A stretch of DNA of 63,211 nucleotides, filler included, from Octopus bimaculoides (lineage: Eukaryota): NCBI RefSeq assembly GCF_001194135.2. It is 5 parts of 4 records of this genome, joined end to end, with 100 filler letters (N's around TTAATTAATTAA, not from the genome) between each part and the next. Parts side by side here need not be neighbours in the genome. Positions count along the whole stretch, not along the records: positions 33,029 to 44,997 come from NC_069007.1; 4 more parts are not named here. One strand, given 5' to 3'. A program made the position numbers and the translations under genes. The stretch's first letter is position 1; each line of letters opens with the position of its first letter. Positions 33,029 through 44,997 of this stretch are shown here, piece after piece. The notes under the pieces were generated by a model that had not been told where the DNA came from, did no database searches, and worked only from the letters and a program-made list of their open reading frames with translations.

Positions 33029-33479
33029 AACAGTGTCCATATCTCTCTGATGTTGTTGCATTTGCTTGTCCATTTGTTCCCTAAACAATTTAATAAGTTC
33101 TACTGTCTGTTTTTCAGCCATCGTTATTACGATGAATAATTTTACGGTAAAGTAAGCATGTATCCTACCGGCGATGCCAATAAACTCTGTTTTATTTCCC
33201 TTGGGAGACTCGCAGAGATAACACAACGAGTTGTACAATTTAATTATTACATTTATTATTCAATTACATACAAAGAACGCACTCACCCAAAGTTCGTTAT
33301 GAATAAACAAGAATCATGTCCGCCATATATCTATCAATGACATTTTACTACGACAGTCACACAGAACAACAACAATGAAACAATGAACTCAGACGAACCA
33401 CATTGACACACGGAACGTCAGACGAATAACATATCCAACAGTCCATATAACAGTAACCATTGAGCTATGTGCCTTCACA
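33029..33479 (-). mobile_element. Gypsy-like LTR retrotransposon 5' end (LTR, PBS-like site, gag start)
   Basis: Minus strand begins TGTGAAGG at 33479; PBS-like TGGCATCGCCGGTAGGAT (14/18 to a tRNA-Ser PBS as recalled); gag-like MAEKQTVELIKLFREQMDKQMQQHQRDM. The LTR 3' end does not show a clean CA. Confidence 0.5.
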
Positions 33480-35206
33480 TGATAGAATAAGTACTGGGCT
33501 TAAAAATAAAAGTCCTGGGGTTGATTTCTTAGACTAAAACACTTCGGGGTGGTGCCCCCAGCATGGCCACTGTCAAATGACTGAAACAAGTAAAAGACGT
33601 GTCTATGTAGGTGCTAGTACTGTGTAAAAAGTACCCTGTACTGTCTGTAAAGTGGTTGGTGTTAGGAAGGGCATCCAACTGTAGAAACCAAGCCCAAACA
33701 GACTGTGGAACCTGGTGTGGTTCCTAGCCTTGCTAGTTCCTGTCAAGCCGTCCAACCAAATCCAGTATCAAAAACAGATAAGTGTTGATAATGATGATGT
33801 TTTTTGTTTGGCAGAAAATATGTATATATGCCAGAATTGTTGATGTTGATGTTAACATTTTCATTCAAGGAATTTAAACTAGCATTTTTTAATGTTAAAA
33901 CATTATTAACCCTGCATGCGTAAGGGAAGCAGGGTTAGTGTTGTCACTTGTCTGTGTGTTTACAAAATTACTGGAAAACAGCCAAACAGATTTTGACCAA
34001 ATTTGGCAGAAATACTCGTTGGCTGAGTGGCTTGAACTCATTAAATTTTGGTTTGATTATCTTTGAAACTAGCAGATGGGTGAATTAAAATGTTTTTCTT
34101 TTCTTTATTACATATGCATAGACTATAAGTAGGGGAAATAACCCTTAATGTCATTTTATTGAAATATGAATTTGTCTGAGAATATATTTATTGAATTAAA
34201 TTTTATTCTATCCTTGTGTGTACAAGGATATGCATTGCCGCTCCGATGCCTTATTTTTTTCATTGTGTTCTTTTTTCACTCATATTCAATGCTATTATCT
34301 TGCCATGTAATTCAACAACTATTTTCTTGTTTTCTGTTTGTGAACTAAGTTATTCTGTTCATTATTAATTTCCTTTGTAACTACATAATTCAGAATTTTC
34401 ATTGACATTTTCTTGAATGTAGAGAAAGCGAAAAAGAAATAATGTTTACCTAAATACATAACAAACATATTTCCCTTTCTATAAACTTTGTATGAATAAA
34501 CTCTAAACTTTCAAAAGCTATCAGCAAGTCAGCAAGTCAACAGAACATGCAGTAAAAATCCTCAGCTTCTAGGAGTGAATAGAAAAAAAAAATGTGACTA
34601 GGTCAGCAGTAAATAATAGTCTTTTATCTTACTATCACATCCCTTTTATATATATATATCTTAGATTGGGCCCTCAACTTCTGATGGAATCATAGGCATT
34701 TTGTTTGATGCATATTTGAACTGGGGAACAAGCTACTCTCTGCATTTTGTCATGGAGAATATATATAGCTTGTTGACAAATGGTGTGTATAGACCTAGAT
34801 CAGCTCACAGCACCATTTGCCTAGACTGAGAGATGCTAATGTTTCCAGTCATCGTATGATGACTGAGTCTCTCTTGATGATTTGCCTGGCCATTCTTTGA
34901 TATTTTCCATTTGTCTTTTCCTCTGCTTCTCATTTTCCCCCCCTTGCACAATTCCTTAAAAAACAGTCCTTACAAGACTGCTGGATCTTGTTACATGGCC
35001 ATACTGTCTCAGTTTTGTTTTCTTCATCCCCCCACCCATGGAATTCCATGTCATTCATCTCTCCTCTTCCCATCGCCCTCGTGTCTGACCCCTCCTACCA
35101 CCAACACTAATCACTGTGCCTGATTCTTCCTCTCGAACATCATCCTCCCTCCCACTCTTGTCTTTCCATCAGGTGTTAACTTACAAAGTCTCAAGACTAG
35201 CATTAA

Positions 35207-35428
35207 CCCTTTTGTTACCGTATTTCTGTTGAGATGCTCTGTGTTTCTTTCAATTAATTTTAAATATACCAAAGAATTTAGTAAAATAACTTAGTAATCA
35301 TTAAGCTAGTGTTAGGAACATAAATTGTGACTAAGGTTTGGTGGAAGATTTTAATTCAATACTTATTCAAACAAGACATTTGTACTACAGAACCAGGGAC
35401 AGTTTCAACCAGGTTGGTATCGAAAGGG
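35207..35428 (+). mobile_element. piggyBac-type MITE, copy 1
   Basis: TTAA|CCCTTTTGTTACC...GGTATCGAAAGGG|TTAA. Confidence 0.8.
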
Positions 35429-35459
35429 TTAAGAATTGTTTCTCTTTTATATATTTTAA

Positions 35460-35674
35460 CACTTTTGTTACCATATTTCTCTTGAGATGTTCTCTGTTTC
35501 TTTCAATTATCTTTAAATATAACAAAGAATTTAGTAAAATAACTTAGTTATCATTAAGCTAGTGTTAGGAACATAAATTGTGACTGATGGAAGATTTTAA
35601 TTCAGAACTTACAAAAACGAGACTTTTGTACTGCAGAGCTAGAGGTGGTTTCAAGCAAGTTGGTATCAAAAGGG
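35460..35674 (+). mobile_element. piggyBac-type MITE, copy 2
   Basis: TTAA|CACTTTTGTTACC...GGTATCAAAAGGG|TTAA; diverged from copy 1. Confidence 0.8.
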
Positions 35675-35811
35675 TTAAGAACATAAATAACACCATTCTG
35701 TGAAGGCTGAGGGTACTATGCCTTCCTCTAGACCCACCAAATAAGCCCTTCAACAACACCCTAGATCACCGTTTCATAATCAGCTTTTCTAACCTGTTCC
35801 CTATTTCACAG

Positions 35812-36058
35812 ATCATAAATGGTGAGGAGTGGCCTCCCTTTCTATTTGAAAGTCCGGTTGACATGCAATATCCTACAGGGTTACCTCAAACATCCCAGTT
35901 TGCTCTTGGGTATGAATATTACAGCGTACATAGTGGTCATCTGATGTGGTCAACTCTGTGGCTCCGTCAGCACAATCTCTTCTGTGATATCCTGGTTAAT
36001 GAACATCCAGACTGGACTGATGAACAGTTACATCAAGCCGCAAGAACTGCTGTCTTAG
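35812..36058 (+). CDS. PTGS: Cyclooxygenase (PTGS)-like exon (equivalent of PTGS2 exon 7), 247 bp
   Basis: ttcacag|ATC...TTAG|gtaagt; IINGEEWPPFLFESPVDMQYPTGLPQTSQFALGYEYYSVHSGHLMWSTLWLRQHNLFCDILVNEHPDWTDEQLHQAARTAVL vs PTGS2 IIDGEMYPP...[52 protein letters not shown]. Confidence 0.93.
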
Positions 36059-36547
36059 GTAAGTTCTTCATCTTCACTTTATGTAGCATATCTAGAGGTG
36101 CTCAGGTATTTATGAGGCTCCACTCTGTCTTAGCCTCACCACCTCCTAGAACTTGGTCTTTCTGTAACCTGCTGGAAAAGCTATCAAAAATATCTTCTTC
36201 TCCCTCTATCTCCTTTCTCTCTCTCTTTCTTTCTTTCTCTCATTCTCTCTCTTTCTCCCTCTCCCTCTCCTCTCTTCTCCTCTTCAATTTCCAGCTGTCA
36301 TTAAGTAGACTATGAGCAAATGTATACATACCAACACGCATGCTTACATATATCTTTCACTTGTTTCTGCCATTAGACTACGGCCATGCTGGGGCACTGC
36401 CTCAAAGAATTTTAGTTGGACGAATCGACCTCAGTACCTTCTTTCTTTGAAGCATATTATTCTGTCGGTCTCTTTTGCTGGACTGCTAAGTTTACGGGGA
36501 TGTAAACACCTCAGCACTGATTGTCTAATGGTGAGGGGTCAAACACA

Positions 36548-36616
<69 letters not shown>

Positions 36617-36973
36617 AGCCCTAGTAATCCATTACAGCACTTACCTAGCCTACCTAATCGTTTAGATCACTTGTGAACTAAACCTCCATACTTTGCCCTA
36701 ACTCTTCGAAACGCCTGTGTTAGAATGGTGGCAGCTGATGAAGGAAAATGTTCTCTATGTGGCCTGTGTGTTTTCTGTACTCTGGTTATTATTATTTTTT
36801 TGTCTACGTTTTGTTTGCAACATCCTGTACCCAGATATGCACCTATATATACAGGTAGATGTAGGTATGCACATACTTGTACGTATATATGCATATACTC
36901 ATTTTTTATTTGTTTTTTATATATATATATACATATATATATACATATGTGTGTGTGTGTGTGTGTGTGTGTG

Positions 36974-37262
36974 AAGGCGCATGGCTTAGTGGTTAGAGTG
37001 TCGAGCTTACAATCATGAGGTTGTGAGTTCGAATCTCGGAGCGGACTGCGTGTTGTATTCTTGAGCAAGACACTTTATTTCACGTTGCTCCAGTTCACTC
37101 AGCTGTAGAAATGAGTTGCAATATCACAGGTGCCAAGCTGTATCAGCCCCTTTGCCTTTCCCTTGGATAACGCTGGTGGCGTGGAGAGGGGAGGTCGGTA
37201 TGCATGGGCGTCTGCTGGTCTTCCATAAAACAACCTTGCCTGGACTTGTGCCTGGGAGGGTA
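36974..37262 (+). mobile_element. tRNA-headed SINE (family D)
   Basis: A box TGGCTTAGTGG, B box GAGTTCGAATC, core GTTGTATTCTTGAGCAAGACACTT; fragments at ~31115-31190 and ~56360-56480. Confidence 0.75.
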
Positions 37263-37282
37263 ACTTTGTCATAGACATCAGC

Positions 37283-37545
37283 TGTTTTGGTGAGGTGAAT
37301 ATCTCTTCAGAAAATCTAAGTGAAAGAGAATAACTATGGACAACTGCTTTGAAACCTTCAGCTTTTATACCTAAACTAATATTTGTACTCTTAGTAATTG
37401 GTGTGCTTGGTTTAGTGAGTAAATGCTTAGATGACAATCTGGATAAGCTAGGGTTTTCAGGAAAACAAATCAACTACATTATATGTACACTACAATTACA
37501 ATTTGTAAGCAGAACAGTAAAAATATGCAAGGCTTTTTGAAAGTT
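37283..37545 (+). mobile_element. C-terminal remnant of a second RLE-type LINE
   Basis: KLIFVLLVIGVLGLVSKCLDDNLDKLGFSGKQINYIICTLQLQFVSRTVKICKAF resembles the R4-type C-terminus (P..IGALG...L...L.KLG...LQ...GT.KI). Confidence 0.55.
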
Positions 37546-38520
37546 AGAATGTGACATTGCTTTGGTAAGCTACATTCCAATGATGGAGCTTTGCATCTTT
37601 GTTAGAAACCAGCTGCTTTTGTACTGGAAGATTTCAAATAATTAATTAAAAATTGAGGAGAACATACATACATACATACATACATACATACATACATACA
37701 TACATACATACACACATACATACATACATACATACATACATACATACATACATACATACATACATACATTTATACATACTTTGATAGGTTTCGGCCAGTA
37801 TTGGCCCGGGCCATGTCTAACTTAATAGCACTTCCTGGCAGAGTCATTCAAATCAGGAATCGGACAATATGGCCCACTCAACTACAGAGTTATTTACAGA
37901 GACATATTCGGGTGTAGGAGGTTTATCCAAGATTTTTTGGAGGAATTTGTCCAAAGACTTCTTGAACTTTATGGGGTCTGTTTCTGCTTTCATGTGTTTT
38001 AATGTAATGTTAAAGAGAGCGGGGCCAATAACATAACATAACTTATGTGGCTATTGATAAGGAGTTTGCAAATCCAGTACCAGGTTTTTAAAAAATTAAG
38101 TAATGGGGTTGATTCATTTGACTAAAATTCATCAAAGTAGTGCCCCAGTATGGCCATAACCTAATGACTAAAACAAGTAAGAGATAGAAGATAAAAGCTA
38201 TATTTGTGTGTGTGTGTTTAAATATGAATTAGAAGCAGCTTGAGGGATATAAACAATATCGAACACACATACACAAGGTATGTGTTTTGCTAGTTCGTGG
38301 GTGGGCTGCACTTATAGGCATAAGTAAATATATTCTCATCAATAGGCACAGGTGTGGCTGTGAGAATAGGTGCAGGTGTGGCTGTGTGGTAAGAAGCTCG
38401 CTTCCTAACCACACAGTTCTGGGGTCAGTCCCACTGTGGGTGTGTGTCTTCTACTATAACCTTAAGCCGACCAAAGCCTTTTGAATGGATTTGGTAGACG
38501 GAAACTGAAAGAACCCCGTC

Positions 38521-38555
<35 letters not shown>

Positions 38556-39239
38556 NNNNNNNNNNNNNNNNNNNNNNNNNNNNNNNNNNNNNNNNNNNNN
38601 NNNNNNNNNNNNNNNNNNNNNNNNNNNNNNNNNNNNNNNNNNNNNNNNNNNNNNNNNNNNNNNNNNNNNNNNNNNNNNNNNNNNNNNNNNNNNNNNNNNN
38701 NNNNNNNNNNNNNNNNNNNNNNNNNNNNNNNNNNNNNNNNNNNNNNNNNNNNNNNNNNNNNNNNNNNNNNNNNNNNNNNNNNNNNNNNNNNNNNNNNNNN
38801 NNNNNNNNNNNNNNNNNNNNNNNNNNNNNNNNNNNNNNNNNNNNNNNNNNNNNNNNNNNNNNNNNNNNNNNNNNNNNNNNNNNNNNNNNNNNNNNNNNNN
38901 NNNNNNNNNNNNNNNNNNNNNNNNNNNNNNNNNNNNNNNNNNNNNNNNNNNNNNNNNNNNNNNNNNNNNNNNNNNNNNNNNNNNNNNNNNNNNNNNNNNN
39001 NNNNNNNNNNNNNNNNNNNNNNNNNNNNNNNNNNNNNNNNNNNNNNNNNNNNNNNNNNNNNNNNNNNNNNNNNNNNNNNNNNNNNNNNNNNNNNNNNNNN
39101 NNNNNNNNNNNNNNNNNNNNNNNNNNNNNNNNNNNNNNNNNNNNNNNNNNNNNNNNNNNNNNNNNNNNNNNNNNNNNNNNNNNNNNNNNNNNNNNNNNNN
39201 NNNNNNNNNNNNNNNNNNNNNNNNNNNNNNNNNNNNNNN

Positions 39240-39649
39240 NAGAACTTTTCCTATAGTGTACTAAAGAACTGGTATAATTGCTCACGTGTTATTTACTGAC
39301 TCTCTTTCTATTTGCTGTAATAATTCACATACACACACATGTATCACTCACATACATACTCTTCTTTGTATGACGGCCTGTCTTTGATTATGTTCTTATA
39401 TGTCGCATTCACACTCACACACAGACATACATCTTTAACGCTACAATAAATATCTCTGTTATTCATCTTATATGGTTGTGGTCTTTCATTACTGGTCATC
39501 TATGTTATCGTCGTATAACATATTATGTATATCATCTCTGATATATATATTTTGTGTTCGACCGTGTGACGCGTTTAAATAAAAGGAGTCCTCTGTTTTT
39601 CCATTCATCACCGTTTCTCCTTTTTGAGTTCGCACGGTCGTTCCTTACA
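39240..39649 (+). mobile_element. 3' part of an LTR related to 12537-13514
   Basis: Shared GACGGCCTGTCTT, ACTCACAC..AGACAT, AATAAA, TTGTG..CGAC.GTG.GACGCG, ending GTCGTTCCTTACA. Confidence 0.55.
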
Positions 39650-40217
39650 TATATATATGTATATACATTTATGTATTTGTGCCTTTATGTCTTTGTTTGC
39701 TCCCCTACCATTGCTTGACAACTGATCTTAGTGTGTTTATGTCCCCGAAACTTTGCAGTTCAACAAAAGAGACTGATAGAATAAGTACTAGGCTTACAAA
39801 GAATAAGTCCTGGGGTCAATTTCTTTGACTAAAGGCGGTGCTCAAGCATGGCTGCAGTCAAAATGACTGAAACATGTAAAAGAGTCAAAGAGTAATGTAT
39901 CTGGTGTTAAAACATATATGTATATATGTGTGTATATTATTATATGTATATATGTATTTGTATATTATATGTATATATGGGTGTGTGTATATATTATATG
40001 TATATGTATGTATGTATATTATTATATGTATATATGTGTGTGTGTGTGTATTATGTATATATATGTATGTGTGTATATTATTTTATGTACATATGTGTGT
40101 GTGTGTATATTATTATATGTAAAAATGCATGTGTGTATTATATGTATATATATATGTGTGTGTATATTATTATATGTTTATATATATATATGTGTGTGTG
40201 TATATATTATTGTCCAG

Positions 40218-40504
40218 CTATGAACATAAAGATTATTGTGGAGGAATACATCGCCCACATGGCCCGTTACTACTACAGTTATGTCTACACTCCGGAGGCT
40301 GTATTCCAAGATGGTGCCCAGTGCAAAGAATTCATGCTGGAAGAGTTCAAGCTGCTTTTACATTGGCACCAAATGTTACCAGACCAAATTGCTTTCAATG
40401 GAACCGCTTATGACATGAAAGACTTTCTGTTCCAGTCACAGTTTCTCATTCAATTTGGAATCGGTCCTTATGTTGAGGCCCTCATTAAACAGTCTGCAGG
40501 AAGG
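40218..40504 (+). CDS. PTGS: Cyclooxygenase (PTGS)-like exon (equivalent of PTGS2 exon 8), 287 bp; HWH present, Tyr385 replaced by Leu
   Basis: tgtccag|CT...GGAAGG|gtaagt; AMNIKIIVEEYIAHMARYYYSYVYTPEAVFQDGAQCKEFMLEEFKLLLHWHQMLPDQIAFNGTAYDMKDFLFQSQFLIQFGIGPYVEALIKQSAGR vs ETIKIVIEDYVQHLSGY...EFNTLYHWHPLLPD...RQIAGR; phases fit both neighbours. Confidence 0.95.
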
Positions 40505-41893
40505 GTAAGTTCTTGCAAGTTCTTGGAACGATTTCTTTTTTTTATTCATTTTCACTTGGCTGGACACTGTCTATTGTTCTTTTTTTTTCTTTTTCCTTTT
40601 TTCTTTCTCTTTTTACTTTCCTCCCTCTTCTTTTCTTCTTCCTTCTTTTTCTTCTTTCTCTCTTCATCTCCTGTCTCCCCCCCCTGTACCCCACCAGATG
40701 ATGTAGTGTCATTCATCCCCCTTGTTTCTTCATTTCAAGATATTTTAAAAGCTGAAAGCAATTGGGGGGATCTAACTCCCAAGGCAGGACATTGCTCAGA
40801 ATCAGCAGAGCCCTGGACAAAACCCTTCACTTTAATTAGTTCCTGTCCTTTATGTTCTCAGTTCAAATCCCACCAGAGTCCAGTTTGCTTTTTTGCTTTC
40901 TTTATCTCTTGGGGGTGTGGTGGGGGTGGGGGAGCGATACTACCTCAAAATAAAGAAAGGGAGGAAGAGAAATGAGGGAGAGAGAGATGAAGGGAAACCT
41001 TGGATAACATTGCAGAATGCAACAGAAACACGAGAGAACAGAGCTGAAGACATTATAAAAAATACATATTGGAACAACTGCAAAGGACACCAGGACAGAA
41101 TGGAACACATAGGAACACTTTAGCGAACACCAGAATATGGTCATAGCAGGAGTCTGTGGAAGATTCTAGAATGTAACATAACACACCAGAATACAGTGGA
41201 ACATATAAGGGCACAAAGAACACATGAAGGCATTATAGAACCTGTCAGACTACAACAGAATGTATCAGAGCACAGTAGGACATTCCTGAACACAATAAGA
41301 ACACAATACAGAAGACAAGAATAGAAAGAACACAGCAGGTGGTGGTAGTGGTGGTGGTGGTGGCAGCGNNNNNNNNNNTGGTGGTAGTAGTAATGGGTGG
41401 TTGTCGAGTGACCATTGCAGTAGGTGGTATTGATGTTGGTGGTGGTGGGTGTGTGTGGCAGTAGTGATGGTGGTGGTAGTAGTAATGGGTGGTTGTCGAG
41501 TGACCATTGCAGTAGGTGGTAGTGCTGTTGGTGATGGTGGTGGCGGTGGGGGTGTGTAGCAGTAGTTATGGTGGGAGGTGATGGTGTAAGTGGTGGTGGC
41601 AATGAGGATAGTGGTGGTGGTGGTGGTGGTGGTGGTAAGTGGTTATGATAATGGGTGGTGGTAGCTGTGGTGGCGGTGGTGGTGATTGTGGTAGGAATGA
41701 GGGCAGAATTATAGTGGAATTAAGAATATTTGCTGATAACTGCACCCACGAGTCAATATGGCACCATCTAGTGGATGTTTGTAAATAGGTTTGGCTTTAA
41801 TTGACCAATTAGGGTTAAGCATTCCCTCGTGTCTTAAATGTGAGTTCACACACACAAGTGCAACTCACACTCACACATATACACATTCATATA

Positions 41894-41933
<40 letters not shown>

Positions 41934-44099
41934 TGTACATGTACACAAGCACACACACACGCATACATAGTCATGTACACCCACTTGTAAATACATATTC
42001 ACACACACCCATGAACACACACACACATACTCACAAACACACATATACACACATACACTCACACACACAGACACGTACACCCACTTATAAATACATATTC
42101 ACACACATACATATACACTTGAACACTCACACACACACAGAGTCACAGATGGTCAAGATAATTAAGGTAACAAGATCCACTGACAATATTTACTTTGCTC
42201 AATTTTTATTTTTTGCTGCCAACTTCACAGTTCGAATCGCACAGGTGGACCAAATTTATATTTCTGATATTGATCAATAAACTAAACTAAATCACCTGTG
42301 AAGATCAATCAACTAAAAAATAAATTACTTGTGAATTACTTTTGAAGAGCCACCTCAACTCCTTTGGTAACAGGATGCTTCACAGGACCACGGGTTAGTA
42401 TTGGTTAGATTTTCTGTCCAACCAATGGCTCCACTCAGAAATTGAAATGCTTCCTGTTACTTATGTGATTTGGGAGTGTCAGCTCAATCTGTTTGTACAT
42501 GTTACTCAATTTTCTGAGTTGAATTCTGTGTATTGTGTTCTTTTCTCTGAGGAAGAGTGGTGGCTCATGTTGGTTGGCCACATGTCGGTTGGCCACATGT
42601 CGATTGGCTACATGTCACATGGTCACAGTGGATGACAAAATATATTGTGGAAACAGGTGACGCCGAGGACTTTGTTTGTGCTTGGGGCGTTGTGTGGGAT
42701 GGCCGGAGCAAATAGAAGCACTGTCGTGAGAGCGAAGGGATTCAGCTGATGATGCCCACCCTTCCTGTCTTTAGATCTTGACTAAAACTGACCCCAAATC
42801 AGTGAAGGAGCTCCTCTGAAGTAGTTTGATTTCCCTGCTAGAAATACCAACCAAATCACCTCGCAATGCCTCTAATCTATCCAAACTTACAAAGCTTTGC
42901 ATTTGCCAGAAAATTTATTATTTGTTGTTTATATGTAAGAAGGACAGTTGTTGGTAGGTTGTGAATGATTGGTTCAGTATCTGTAGCTGATGAGGTGTAA
43001 TGATGTAGAAACATGTGGCCTGCTGTTCAATGATATTATTCAGAGCCCCACATTATCTTCTCATAGACAATGTAGATTTCCCCATACACAGCCAATCAGG
43101 AGAATTTCTTTTCTGAGACAACTACAACAGTAAATGTATCATTTGTATGTTTGGGTGTTGATCAATGGTTCTCGGCTATTTTTCCCCCCCCTATGAATCC
43201 CTTTTGATTTCAGTTTTATTCAACTGGATCTCCATAGCCATTCGCTGTAAATATAAAAAAAACTTACTGCATTTTTATTGTTAAATATTATTAGAAATTA
43301 TATATAAAAAAAAATTTTAATTGTTGAATTACAAATAATGAACTGTACATGAATTTTAACAGCAAAGCCTTATATGGACCCACAACGGAAATATGGTCTC
43401 TCAAGTATGGTCTCTCAAATATGAACCCTGGTTGAGAATCACTGGTGTACACAAACATGTTAAATATAAATATACACAGCTTAATTTTAATTATCACTTA
43501 CCTGCATGGCAATCATGTAGTTTTGAGTTCAGTTCTGCTGCACAGCACCTTAGGCAAGTTGTCTCCAACTAATACCCCCAGGGCAACCAAGTGAATTTAG
43601 TAGATGGCAACTGTGTGTATACATACATACACAAATAATATATATACATCCTAAATGTGAATGGATTTATAATAGAAGACTAAAGCTACTTAGTGGCTCC
43701 CTCATTGGTTTACATAAACAGCAGTTAAATACTGGAGTAGATTCAATCCTTTAACTAGAAAATTAAATTTCATGCTTATTCCAGTTATGATTTTAAATAC
43801 CTACCAAAGAATGATTTTTTTTTTCTGCAAGTTACATTGCCTCAACAAACTTGACATATATCAACAAAAAATAATTCCAAACACAACATTTCTTCAACAA
43901 AAGATAGACTGGTATACAGAACTGCCTTCTGCAGTTAAGGGTAATGAAATTTTGAGTGGCTGTATCTGATTTCCATTGTAAAAGGGTTAAATTAATGATT
44001 CTCAAGACTGGTATTATGTTAATTAATCAAAGCTTCTCATCATTGTTGTATTGACAGAAAGCTTGCTAAAGGTCTGCTTTGATTGTGTTGTTGCGACAG

Positions 44100-44244
44100 G
44101 TCACTCACCATAACCATGGTCCTGCAACTATACTCCATGCCAGAAAAGCCTTACTCCATGCCAGAACATTACGACTCCAGTCCTACAACAATTACCTCAG
44201 ACATTTCAAGTTGAAAACCCCAAAGACCTTTATTGAGCTGACAG
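44100..44244 (+). CDS. PTGS: Cyclooxygenase (PTGS)-like exon (equivalent of PTGS2 exon 9), 145 bp
   Basis: gcgacag|GTC...ACAG|gtaagc; VTHHNHGPATILHARKALLHARTLRLQSYNNYLRHFKLKTPKTFIELTG vs VAGGRNVPP...[28 protein letters not shown]. Confidence 0.9.
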
Positions 44245-44997
44245 GTAAGCTGGTACCTTTCCTATTCCCCTCTTCTCTCTCTCTTTCCATCTCTCCTATT
44301 TCTCTCAATCTGTAAGTTACCTCCTATCCACCCATCCATCCATCCATCTCTAACAAGTCAAGCAACCGCATGCAGGTTCCTTCATTGGCTGTTCTTCAAG
44401 TAGCTGTTGTCTAATGTACACTGGATGAGATTTCAGGTAAAGCAAAACAGATGGAAAAATATCAGCTCAACCTGGCCCAACCAATCCAAATTGTTTTAAC
44501 CCTGCAAGTTTTTTCTATCCTTTCTTTCATATATCAGGTGTGGATGTGTGGTAAGAAGCTGGCTTCCCAACCACATAGTCCTGGGTTTAGTCCCACTGTG
44601 TGGCACTTTGGGCAAGTGTCTTCTACTATAACCTCGAGCTGACTGACCAAAGCCTTATGAGTGGATTTGGTAGACAGAAACTAAGAGAAGGTCTCAAGTA
44701 TATATATATATATATATATATGTATATGTATATATCTGTGCACGTGTCTTTGTGTCTGTCTTTGTACCCTCATCACTGCTTGACAACTGGTGTTGGTGTG
44801 TTTAAGTCCCTGTTACTTAGTGGTTCAGCAAGAGAGACTGATAGAAAAAGTACTAGGCTTAAAAAAAAAAAAAGAAATTCTGGAGTTGATTTGTTCAACT
44901 AAAATTCCACAAGGCAGTGCTCCAGCATGGCTGCAGTCAAATGACTGAAACAAAGAAAAGAATAAAAGTGTGTATATATATATATATATATATATAT

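What the first reader, a model, noticed from the sequence alone, without database searches (positions are those of the whole stretch)
40322..40385. Cyclooxygenase homologue lacking the catalytic Tyr385 but keeping the heme-ligand HWH
Seen: the exon reads EEFKLLL-HWH-QMLPD where PTGS has AEFNTLY-HWH-PLLPD; the Tyr385 position is codon TTA (40358-40360), two changes from a Tyr codon, so a single base error cannot explain it, and A-to-I editing (TTA to TTG) cannot restore Tyr. The neighbouring NRI motif, Asn382 and Pro389 are also replaced, yet all three exons are open with intact splice sites. Established: the Tyr385 radical starts cyclooxygenation, and Y385F PTGS keeps peroxidase activity but loses cyclooxygenase activity; His388 is the proximal heme ligand. 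Inference: this is a repurposed PTGS paralogue (peroxidase-only, a different lipid chemistry, or a non-catalytic partner subunit, since PTGS works as a dimer), i.e. a possible cephalopod-specific branch of oxylipin metabolism.
Basis: partly seen in the sequence, partly recalled or inferred. Interest (0 to 1): 0.82.

Follow-up and report, generated by a model that had tools for sequence, protein, structure and literature searches.

The report
Octopus COX homologue lacking catalytic tyrosine
These are three exons of an intact, selectively conserved Octopus bimaculoides gene of the cyclooxygenase (PTGS) family whose protein keeps both heme histidines but has leucine where the radical-forming Tyr385 should be, so it almost certainly cannot make prostaglandin H2 the usual way, and it may be the octopus's only COX-family gene.

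Summary
Window 40218-40504 is exon 8 of a 10-exon PTGS-family gene of Octopus bimaculoides (XP_014768111.1, annotated 'prostaglandin G/H synthase 1'). Exons 7 and 9 lie at 35812-36058 and 44100-44244. The exon aligns without gaps to COX-2 and reads LLL-HWH, with TTA (Leu) at Tyr385.

O. sinensis has the same codon and O. vulgaris the same Leu, which rules out a base error. The full coding sequences of O. bimaculoides and O. sinensis give dN/dS 0.125 (catalytic domain 0.09), all splice sites are GT-AG, and the predicted fold is COX (TM 0.86-0.91). It is therefore not a pseudogene.

His207, His388, Arg120, Tyr348, Tyr355, Glu524 and Ser530 are kept. Changes include Gln203Asp, Tyr504Ile and Gly533Ser, and the otherwise universal WKPSTFGG motif is replaced.

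The protein is only about 35% identical to any COX, whereas other mollusc COXs are 56-72% identical to each other. No canonical cephalopod COX was seen, so 'paralogue' and 'cephalopod-specific' are unproven.

Tyr385-less 'COX-like' genes already exist in insects, a prawn and sipunculans, so this is a new member of a known kind. The most likely function is a cyclooxygenase-dead heme protein that still binds lipid. It matters for cephalopod NSAID pharmacology.

The parts
35812..36058 (+). Exon 7 of 10 (247 nt, ends in phase 1) of the O. bimaculoides PTGS-like gene. It encodes IINGEEWPPF...HQAARTAVL.
   Evidence: Acceptor cacAG| and donor |GTAAG were read. tblastn to COX-2 gives E 5e-22. The exact exon model reproduces XP_014768111.1 (L002 59599-59845 equals window 35812-36058). 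The size is the same as exon 7 of the Haliotis COX gene.
40218..40504 (+). Exon 8 of 10 (287 nt). It encodes AMNIKIIVEEY...KQSAGR, including Tyr348, Tyr355, Phe381, Leu384, Leu385, His386, Trp387 and His388.
   Evidence: Read. Gap-free alignment to COX-2. It is 98.6% identical to O. sinensis with no indels, against about 85% with indels for the flanking intron. The size is the same as Haliotis exon 8.
40358..40360 (+). TTA codon, giving Leu at the position of the catalytic Tyr385.
   Evidence: The codon is identical in O. sinensis, since it is not among the differing codons. The O. vulgaris protein also has LLLHWH.
40361..40369 (+). CAT TGG CAC, giving His386-Trp387-His388. His388 is the proximal heme ligand.
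44100..44244 (+). Exon 9 of 10 (145 nt). It encodes VTHHNHGPAT...TFIELT(G).
   Evidence: Acceptor acAG| and donor |GTAAG were read. tblastn gives E 8e-05. The size is the same as Haliotis exon 9.
36059..40217 (+). Intron 7. It contains a 685-N assembly gap (38556-39240) and an AT/TG-rich satellite that runs to within about 12 nt of the exon 8 acceptor.
40505..44099 (+). Intron 8. It contains a 10-N gap (41369-41378) and GGT- and CA-rich simple repeats.

Best explanation
The finding lies in exons 7-9 of the Octopus bimaculoides gene for XP_014768111.1, a real and selectively maintained member of the prostaglandin G/H synthase (PTGS/COX) family.

Shown:
- The gene has the full 10-exon PTGS structure.
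- The protein has a signal peptide, an EGF-like domain, a membrane-binding domain and a catalytic domain, and it is predicted to fold like COX-1/2.
- Leu replaces Tyr385 in three Octopus species.
- The coding sequence is under strong purifying selection.
- His207, His388, Arg120, Tyr348, Tyr355, Glu524, Gly526, Ala527 and Ser530 are kept.
- Gln203, Tyr504, Gly533, the 121-129 loop and the 540-552 'CSPxYWKPSTFGG' segment are replaced.

Inferred:
- Without Tyr385 there is no tyrosyl radical next to the fatty-acid channel. Tyr504, which I recall as an alternative radical site, is also gone. The protein therefore cannot start the bis-oxygenation of arachidonate. Recalled Y385F work showed loss of cyclooxygenase activity with peroxidase activity kept.
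- Because both heme histidines and the carboxylate gate of the channel are conserved under selection, the protein most likely still binds heme and a fatty acid or oxylipin.
- It probably works as a cyclooxygenase-dead heme protein: a peroxidase or hydroperoxide-handling enzyme, possibly with an altered distal site (Asp203), or a lipid-binding protein.
- It probably acts on its own rather than as a subunit of a canonical COX.
For: Family and integrity:
- phmmer gives E 1e-53 to COX-2/COX-1, against 3e-07 for the next superfamily member. Pfam An_peroxidase scores 4e-20.
- Exact 10-exon GT-AG gene models were built in O. bimaculoides and O. sinensis.
- Exons 6-9 have sizes 84/247/287/145, identical to the Haliotis canonical COX gene.
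- The AlphaFold2 model has pLDDT 80.9 and pTM 0.82. Foldseek gives TM 0.86/0.91 and rmsd 2.5 A to human COX-2 5f1a.

Leu385 is real:
- The TTA codon is identical in O. sinensis, and LLLHWH is present in O. vulgaris.

Selection:
- Full-length dN/dS is 0.125 (27 nonsynonymous and 53 synonymous differences, dS 0.157, Fisher p 4e-19). The catalytic domain gives 0.094 and exons 7-9 give 0.10.
- Introns are 83-90% identical with indels, while the exons are 93-99% identical without indels.

Residues:
- Of the six Tyr385-less lineages tabulated (Octopus, Pediculus, Macrobrachium, Timema, Ladona, Aspidosiphon), only Octopus keeps His207, His388, Arg120 and Ser530 together.

Acting alone:
- No canonical cephalopod COX appears among the best 120 relatives of Haliotis COX, although gastropods, bivalves, a chiton and an aplacophoran are all there at 56-72% identity.
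- WKPSTFGG is kept in every other sequence tabulated, including the most decayed ones, but is replaced in Octopus.
Against: - No expression or protein data could be obtained. The 90% cluster holds only genome-annotation proteins and no transcript-derived member. By contrast, an oyster COX cluster has 105 members, and at least seven of those listed come only from Logan run assemblies.
- Gln203Asp and several other changes near the heme could impair peroxidase chemistry or heme binding.
- The canonical N-glycosylation sequons at Asn144 and Asn410 are absent.
- Only 60% of positions that are at least 90% conserved in other COXs are retained, similar to the louse COX-like protein at 63%. A non-enzymatic role is therefore quite possible.
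- The absence of a canonical octopus COX rests on incomplete searches: a word-index search with only the best 120 shown, and clustering at 50%.
- The peroxidase/lipid-binding mechanism is inference, not test.
Confidence: 0.6

Rival explanations
1. Non-catalytic (allosteric) partner subunit. The protein heterodimerises with a canonical, Tyr385-bearing octopus COX and tunes its activity, in the way the allosteric monomer does in vertebrate COX dimers.
For: - From memory, COX dimers work as an allosteric plus a catalytic monomer, and a Tyr385-mutant/native heterodimer remains active.
- The fatty-acid gate residues Arg120, Tyr355 and Glu524, which an allosteric subunit would need, are kept.
- In a prawn, an F385 COX-like protein clusters beside a canonical-type sequence (P0167, an unnamed Logan assembly of unknown organism).
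Against: - No canonical cephalopod COX was found.
- The 121-129 loop (SPPTY becomes HTLSY) and the 540-552 segment (CSPxYWKPSTFGG becomes YMKARGLLDNYGS) are rewritten only in Octopus. I recall both as lying at the dimer interface.
- Keeping both heme histidines would not be needed for a purely allosteric role.
Confidence: 0.12
2. Still a fatty-acid oxygenase or isomerase with a relocated chemistry. One version uses a radical on the retained neighbouring Tyr348, or on one of the new tyrosines at 356-361. Another is a heme-dependent transformation of fatty-acid hydroperoxides. Either would give an octopus-specific oxylipin.
For: - Tyr348 is kept and the channel stays hydrophobic, with mostly conservative changes (V349I, L352M, S353A, F205L, I377M).
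- There are a few distinctive changes (L359Y, V523Q, G533S).
- Purifying selection is strong on the catalytic domain (0.094).
- The heme ligands are kept.
Against: - I know of no precedent for a COX-clade enzyme working without Tyr385. The tyrosine is present in 61 of the 70 superfamily representatives tabulated, including the bacterial-type 'LYRWH' sequences.
- From memory, Tyr348 mutants of COX keep activity and Y385F does not, so Tyr348 does not substitute in the known enzymes.
Confidence: 0.13
3. A heme-less or catalytically inert protein (pseudoenzyme) kept for a structural, lipid-carrier or signalling role.
For: - It shows the same overall level of loss at conserved COX positions as the louse COX-like protein (60% against 63%).
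- Gln203Asp, the lost glycosylation sequons and the C-terminal -SEF in place of -xEL point the same way.
Against: His207, His388, His386 and Trp387 are all retained. Four of the five other Tyr385-less COX-likes tabulated (Pediculus, Macrobrachium, Timema, Ladona) keep Trp387 but lose at least one of the histidines, and Aspidosiphon loses all four.
Confidence: 0.12
4. Pseudogene or gene under relaxed constraint, or a sequencing or assembly error at the codon.
For: - The protein is highly divergent, about 35% identical to any COX.
- The window is the same assembly as the public record, so that record cannot confirm it.
Against: - dN/dS is 0.125 with p 4e-19.
- All 10 exons are open with GT-AG introns in two species.
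- The TTA codon is identical in O. sinensis, and Leu is present in O. vulgaris.
- Two nucleotide changes would be needed to restore Tyr.
Confidence: 0.02

Closest known systems
Vertebrate prostaglandin G/H synthases 1 and 2 (PTGS1/PTGS2, COX-1/COX-2), and the laboratory Y385F mutant
   Same: - Same domain order: signal peptide, EGF-like domain, membrane-binding domain and catalytic domain.
- Same predicted fold (TM 0.86-0.91).
- Same heme histidines His207 and His388.
- Same Arg120, Tyr355, Glu524, Tyr348, Gly526, Ala527, Ser530 and Leu531.
- Like Y385F, it lacks the radical-forming tyrosine.
   Different: - About 33-35% identity only.
- Natural Leu385, plus Gln203Asp, Tyr504Ile, Gly533Ser, Val523Gln, Leu359Tyr and Arg513Ala.
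- Sequons at Asn144 and Asn410 are absent.
- WKPSTFGG and the 121-129 loop are replaced.
- The C-terminus is -SEF rather than -STEL.
Canonical molluscan COX (e.g. Haliotis cracherodii, Patella, Mytilus, Crassostrea, the chiton Liolophura, aplacophorans)
   Same: - Same phylum.
- Same 10-exon gene plan, with exons 6-9 of identical length.
- A sequon at the same place (NGT in Octopus, NVS in Haliotis), read from the sequences.
   Different: - Canonical mollusc COXs are 56-72% identical to each other and 54-59% identical to vertebrate COXs, and all tabulated ones keep Tyr385.
- The octopus protein is about 35% identical to them, sits on a very long unplaced branch, and its gene is 66-70 kb against 16 kb.
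Tyr385-less 'COX-like' proteins of other invertebrates: Pediculus humanus (Phe), Macrobrachium (Phe), Timema (His), Ladona (Gln), Aquatica (Pro) and Aspidosiphon 'cyclooxygenase a-like protein'. The sipunculan entries are GenBank ALG966xx, which I attribute from memory to Havird et al. 2015, J Mol Evol 80:193.
   Same: - They are PTGS-clade proteins that have lost the catalytic tyrosine.
- They have low identity to canonical COX.
- Conservation at otherwise invariant sites is similar (Octopus 60%, Pediculus 63%).
- Pediculus even shares 'HWHQMLPD'.
   Different: - Each of the five others tabulated (Aquatica was not) has also lost Arg120, and each has lost the distal His207, the proximal His388 or both. 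Octopus keeps all of them plus Ser530.
- Conversely, the five tabulated keep WKPSTFGG and Octopus alone has lost it.
- Whether they share an origin is unresolved, and independent losses are likely.
Other branches of the peroxidase-cyclooxygenase superfamily (alpha-dioxygenases, bacterial/fungal-type 'LYRWH' sequences, peroxinectins, DUOX, MPO/LPO)
   Same: The same superfamily heme domain (Pfam PF03098).
   Different: - They are far more distant (E 3e-07 or worse against 1e-53; TM 0.5-0.57).
- The dioxygenase branches keep the catalytic Tyr ('LYRWH').

Membership tests
PTGS / prostaglandin G/H synthase gene family (evolutionary membership) | Best sequence match is to PGHS-1/2 rather than to other peroxidase-cyclooxygenase superfamily branches | tested here: met
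   E 1e-53 to COX-2/COX-1, against 3e-07 for DUOX1 and 4e-05 for peroxinectin. Pfam PF03098 is hit.
PTGS / prostaglandin G/H synthase gene family (evolutionary membership) | Signal peptide, then a Cys-rich EGF-like domain, a membrane-binding domain and the catalytic domain, with the Cys569-Cys575 pair | tested here: met
   The full-length protein P0152 reads MKGSTLQIPLLMMMMMMIALIFPAYVKA / NTACCSFPCQNNGICSPTGRNGFICNCQNSGYYGTNCE ... LICSNIKQPCP. Cys159, Cys569 and Cys575 align. The helices of the membrane-binding region are predicted.
PTGS / prostaglandin G/H synthase gene family (evolutionary membership) | Conserved exon-intron plan | tested here: met
   There are 10 GT-AG exons in O. bimaculoides and O. 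sinensis. The Haliotis canonical COX gene also has 10 exons, with exons 6-9 of identical lengths 84/247/287/145.
PTGS / prostaglandin G/H synthase gene family (evolutionary membership) | COX three-dimensional fold | tested here: met
   The AF2 model has pLDDT 80.9 and pTM 0.82. Foldseek's top 35 hits are all COX-1/2, with TM 0.82-0.86 by query and 0.88-0.91 by target. The model was built from an alignment of canonical COXs, so the fold is partly imposed.
Catalytically competent cyclooxygenase (EC 1.14.99.1) | Tyr385, the site of the tyrosyl radical that abstracts the 13-pro-S hydrogen | tested here: not met
   Leu (TTA, 40358-40360) in O. bimaculoides. The codon is the same in O. sinensis, and O. 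vulgaris has Leu.
Catalytically competent cyclooxygenase (EC 1.14.99.1) | Heme ligation and peroxidase site: proximal His388, distal His207 and Gln203 | tested here: inconclusive
   His388 and His207 are present, and Gln203 is replaced by Asp. The effect on peroxidase chemistry cannot be read from sequence.
Catalytically competent cyclooxygenase (EC 1.14.99.1) | Substrate channel: Arg120, Tyr355, Glu524, Tyr348, Ser530, Gly526 and Gly533 | tested here: inconclusive
   Arg120, Tyr355, Glu524, Tyr348, Ser530 and Gly526 are kept. Gly533 is Ser, Val523 is Gln and Leu359 is Tyr. Eleven of 25 channel residues are identical to Haliotis, and most of the others are conservative changes. The residue list is from memory.
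Catalytically competent cyclooxygenase (EC 1.14.99.1) | Conversion of arachidonate to PGG2/PGH2 | not testable with these tools
   This needs recombinant protein and an oxygen-uptake or LC-MS assay.
Tyr385-less invertebrate 'COX-like' proteins | PTGS-clade protein with the catalytic Tyr replaced and low identity to canonical COX | tested here: met
   Leu385 and about 35% identity. The conserved-site retention of 60% resembles the 63% of Pediculus.
Tyr385-less invertebrate 'COX-like' proteins | Common descent with the insect, prawn or sipunculan COX-like genes | tested here: inconclusive
   In the NJ tree Octopus sits alone on a long branch, outside the canonical group and outside the arthropod/sipunculan COX-like group. 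Long-branch effects are likely.
Pseudogene | Disabling mutations, or dN/dS near 1 | tested here: not met
   The reading frames are intact in two species. dN/dS is 0.125 with p 4e-19.

The most novel reading that the evidence does not exclude
Octopus (perhaps all octopods) has no Tyr385-bearing cyclooxygenase at all. On this reading the selectively maintained, heme-ligand-retaining protein is the sole descendant of the molluscan COX. It has been rebuilt for a different heme-dependent lipid chemistry or a non-radical role: new distal Asp203, Tyr-rich lower channel, Gln523 and a rewritten dimer-interface motif. Octopus prostaglandin synthesis, if any, would then be COX-independent, and NSAIDs would have no canonical target in these animals.
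Probability: 0.25. Interest if true: 0.7.

Novelty: new member of a known kind. Interest (0 to 1): 0.45.

Why it matters
1. Annotation. RefSeq calls this protein 'prostaglandin G/H synthase 1'. A cross-genome survey says COX genes are present in all the Lophotrochozoa it sampled, a set that includes O. bimaculoides (PMC8835781). With Leu385 that functional label is very probably wrong.

2. Cephalopod welfare pharmacology. PMC9953149 proposes that ketorolac acts in cephalopods through the same target as in mammals, using an O. bimaculoides 'COX/PGS' sequence, XP_014768109.1. The residues that paper lists as not conserved include L359, R513, M522 and V523, which is exactly the set changed in this protein. 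It is therefore probably the same gene. If so, the octopus member of that alignment cannot be a working cyclooxygenase.

3. Enzyme evolution. This is a natural experiment: a COX that lost Tyr385 and Tyr504 but kept both heme histidines and the fatty-acid gate under strong purifying selection. It is a good candidate for finding what a COX scaffold does without its radical.

It is not a new kind of system. Tyr385-less COX-like genes are already deposited from insects, a prawn and sipunculans.

Tried and rejected
- **First word-index search.** The three-exon peptide returned nothing, although a 96-97% identical orthologue exists. The exhaustive representative search and a second search with the full-length protein recovered it. 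One search is therefore a tool miss, not absence.
- **Search for a canonical cephalopod COX.**
  - None appears among the best 120 of 845 relatives of Haliotis COX.
  - None appears among the representatives looked up by name.
  - There is no second COX exon set in the 10-kb flanks of the gene in either octopus genome.
  - All of these are incomplete, so absence is suggested and not proven.
- **Metagenome scan.** It used canonical motifs (WLREHNRV, WKPSTFGG) that the octopus protein lacks. It returned only canonical-type or distant loci and nothing octopus-like.
- **Neighbour-joining tree with 100 bootstraps.** Octopus is unplaced on a long branch, so the tree cannot separate 'ancient paralogue' from 'fast-evolving orthologue'. 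An earlier, slower version of the script timed out.
- **Literature.**
  - Havird et al. 2015 is not held.
  - Searches for cephalopod COX or Tyr385 reports found only PMC9953149 and PMC8835781. No paper noting Leu385 in octopus was found.
  - The Sepia genome paper mentions only HPGDS.
- **Rfam scan of the piece.** No RNA family was found.
- **Rejected readings.**
  - Sequencing error, because three species agree.
  - Rescue by A-to-I editing, because TTA can only become TTG.
  - Pseudogene, because dN/dS is 0.125.
  - Membership of another superfamily branch such as peroxinectin or alpha-dioxygenase.
Full report
**1. What is in the sequence**

The piece (33029-44997) is 100% identical to Octopus bimaculoides assembly GCA_001194135.2, chromosome CM046627.1. 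The identity includes its 685-N gap.

tblastn with a COX-2 sequence finds three colinear plus-strand segments. Reading the junctions gives three exons:

| Exon | Window coordinates | Length |
|---|---|---|
| 7 | 35812-36058 | 247 nt |
| 8 | 40218-40504 | 287 nt |
| 9 | 44100-44244 | 145 nt |

Each has an AG acceptor and a GTAAG donor. Joined, they encode 226 residues identical to residues 239-464 of XP_014768111.1, annotated 'prostaglandin G/H synthase 1 isoform X1 [Octopus bimaculoides]'.

The finding's range 40322-40385 reads CKEFMLEEFKLLLHWHQMLPD. TTA (Leu) is at 40358-40360 and His-Trp-His at 40361-40369.

Yes.

- Exon 8 aligns without a gap to COX-2 over 94 residues (E 4e-17). Leu lies opposite Tyr385, and HWH, including the proximal ligand His388, is matched.
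- The three exons together score E 1e-53 against COX-2 and COX-1. The next superfamily members score 3e-07 or worse. Pfam sees the animal heme peroxidase domain.
Two changes are needed to reach a Tyr codon, and A-to-I editing gives only TTG, still Leu.

**3. Is it an error or a pseudogene?**

No.

An exhaustive HMMER search of 1.84 billion cluster representatives found one close relative, P0001. It is O. sinensis XP_036370478.1. The same 90% cluster also holds an O. vulgaris fragment and an exon-4-skipping O. bimaculoides isoform. All of them read LLLHWHQMLPD.

I fetched both genomic loci and built exact 10-exon GT-AG gene models. These translate to the deposited proteins.

- Nei-Gojobori dN/dS over the whole coding sequence is 0.125: 27 nonsynonymous and 53 synonymous differences, dS 0.157, Fisher p 4e-19.
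- The catalytic domain gives 0.094, and the three window exons give 0.10.
- The TTA codon is unchanged between the two species.
- Exons are 93-99% identical without indels. The surrounding introns are 83-90% identical with many indels.

**4. Family membership**

The full protein has a signal peptide, the Cys-rich EGF-like module, a membrane-binding region and the catalytic domain.

The gene plan matches a canonical mollusc COX gene. Haliotis has 10 exons, and exons 6-9 have identical lengths of 84/247/287/145 nt.

An AlphaFold2 model has pLDDT 80.9 and pTM 0.82. It superposes on human COX-2 with TM 0.86/0.91 and rmsd 2.5 A. Other superfamily folds reach only TM 0.5-0.57. The model used an alignment of canonical COXs, so this is confirmation rather than independent proof.

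**5. Anatomy of the active sites** (ovine COX-1 numbering)

Kept:
- Arg120, His204, His207 (distal), Tyr348, Tyr355
- Phe381, Leu384, His386, Trp387, His388 (proximal)
- Phe518, Glu524, Gly526, Ala527, Ser530, Leu531, Leu534

Changed:
- Tyr385Leu, Gln203Asp, Tyr504Ile
- Asn382Lys, Thr383Leu, Val349Ile, Leu352Met, Ser353Ala
- Leu359Tyr, Ile377Met, Arg513Ala, Met522Val, Val523Gln, Gly533Ser
- The sequons at Asn144 and Asn410 are absent.
- The C-terminus is -SEF instead of the usual -xEL.

Two segments are rewritten. The first is the 121-129 loop (SPPTY becomes HTLSY). The second is 540-552 (CSPxYWKPSTFGG becomes YMKARGLLDNYGS). The second motif is present in every other sequence I tabulated, even the most decayed COX-like proteins, so its loss is specific to Octopus.

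Of 172 positions that are at least 90% conserved in 37 other COX sequences, Octopus keeps 60%. Canonical COXs keep 88-99%, and the louse COX-like protein keeps 63%.

**6. Relatives and context**

The octopus protein is only about 33-36% identical to any other COX. Canonical mollusc COXs (gastropods, bivalves, a chiton, an aplacophoran) are 56-72% identical to Haliotis COX. Vertebrate COXs reach 54-59%.

No cephalopod appears among the best 120 of those relatives. None appears in the clusters I could name. No second COX gene lies within 10 kb of this one. In a neighbour-joining tree Octopus sits alone on a very long, unplaced branch.

'Paralogue' is therefore not shown. The gene could equally be the only, fast-evolved descendant of the mollusc COX. 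These searches are incomplete, because eukaryote genomes cannot be scanned with the tools here.

The tyrosine is present in 61 of the 70 superfamily representatives tabulated. Public records do hold other PTGS-clade proteins without it:

| Organism | Residue at 385 |
|---|---|
| Pediculus | Phe |
| Macrobrachium | Phe |
| Timema | His |
| Ladona | Gln |
| Aquatica | Pro |
| Aspidosiphon ('cyclooxygenase a-like protein') | Pro |

 Each of the five placed in the residue table (Aquatica was not) has also lost Arg120. Each has also lost at least one heme histidine. Octopus is the exception.

**7. Literature**

No held paper notes Leu385 in octopus.

PMC9953149 aligns an O. bimaculoides 'COX/PGS' (XP_014768109.1) with vertebrate COX and suggests that ketorolac may act through it. 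The residues it reports as not conserved include L359, R513, M522 and V523. Those are exactly the ones changed in this protein. The accession is two away from this protein's, and the sequence identical to XP_014768111.1 carries two EukProt entries. Oyster COX shows the same pattern of several accessions on one protein sequence. I infer it is the same gene, but could not verify this. That paper lists 'Y387' as conserved. Trp387 is conserved here and Tyr385 is not.

PMC8835781 says COX genes are present in all the Lophotrochozoa it sampled, a set that includes O. bimaculoides.

**8. How it most likely works**

Shown: this is an intact, constrained COX-fold protein with both heme histidines and the channel gate, but without Tyr385 and Tyr504.

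From established COX enzymology (recalled, not tested here):
- The Tyr385 radical, generated by the heme peroxidase cycle, abstracts hydrogen from arachidonate.
- Y385F loses cyclooxygenase activity but keeps peroxidase activity.
- Tyr504 is an alternative radical site.

Inference: the octopus protein cannot perform cyclooxygenation. Selection on the heme ligands and on Arg120, Tyr355, Glu524 and Ser530 suggests that it still binds heme and a fatty acid or oxylipin. It would then act as a peroxidase or hydroperoxide-handling enzyme, or as a lipid-binding protein with a modified distal site (Asp203).

The rewritten 121-129 and 540-552 segments, which I recall as dimer-interface elements, together with the lack of a visible canonical partner, argue against the 'allosteric subunit' idea without excluding it.

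Other readings remain open. One is a relocated radical, for example on Tyr348. Another is a heme-less pseudoenzyme. No expression evidence was obtainable. The existence of a RefSeq exon-4-skipping isoform hints at transcript support only indirectly.

**9. Verdict**

This is a new member of an already known kind, the catalytic-tyrosine-less COX-like proteins of invertebrates. It is unusual within that kind for keeping its heme and substrate-gate residues. It has practical relevance for how the octopus 'COX' is annotated and for NSAID use in cephalopods.

Noticed in passing
window 39914-40205: A roughly 290-bp AT/TG-rich satellite (57-bp period, 4.6 copies, over TATATG-like units) runs to within about 12 nt of the exon 8 acceptor at 40216-40217. 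It leaves only 'attattgtccag' as the acceptor context. In frame it creates a spurious 349-aa ORF (39926-40975) that runs through exon 8.
   Followed up: partly
window 38556-39240 and 41369-41378: These are assembly gaps of 685 N and 10 N inside introns 7 and 8. The same gaps are present in the public chromosome-level assembly (L002). The O. sinensis locus has no gaps.
   Followed up: yes
window 35203-35433 and 35456-35681: Two tandem copies of a roughly 230-bp repeat lie just upstream of exon 7. Further copies at 82-94% identity occur elsewhere in the same gene's introns and downstream (L002 20648-20939 and 85346-85823; O. sinensis L001 73465-73694). It looks like a short interspersed element.
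   Followed up: partly
window 33187-33431: A 245-bp segment is repeated at 97.6% identity about 4 kb upstream in the same intron (L002 52958-53202).
   Followed up: no
L002 24920-25048 (exon 4, outside the window): RefSeq isoform X2 (XP_052833197.1, 550 aa) skips the in-frame 129-nt exon 4. That removes 43 residues, including Arg120 and the start of the catalytic domain.
   Followed up: partly
L002 76062-76450 (exon 10, outside the window): The otherwise universal CSPxYWKPSTFGG motif is replaced by YMKARGLLDNYGS in Octopus only. The C-terminus ends -SEF instead of the -xEL seen in the canonical COXs tabulated. AF2 confidence is low in both places.
   Followed up: partly
L001 versus L003: The octopus gene spans 66-70 kb, against 16 kb for the Haliotis COX gene with the same 10 exons. 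Intron 3 is about 20.7 kb in O. sinensis but about 9.7 kb in O. bimaculoides, and that locus contains 24 kb of N overall.
   Followed up: no
window 41380-41692 and 37662-37779: GGT-rich imperfect repeats (43- and 101-bp periods) create long His/Pro/Thr-rich or Gly/Val-rich spurious ORFs on both strands (e.g. 41141-41602, minus strand). An (ACAT)n array of 29 copies creates 'MYVC' repeat ORFs. None has any protein homology signal.
   Followed up: partly
proteins P0169, P0011, P0303, P0024, P0022 (other organisms): Insects usually said to lack COX (louse, stick insect, dragonfly, firefly) and a prawn carry PTGS-clade genes with Phe, His, Gln or Pro at position 385. The prawn protein clusters beside a canonical-type sequence of unknown organism (P0167).
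   Followed up: partly
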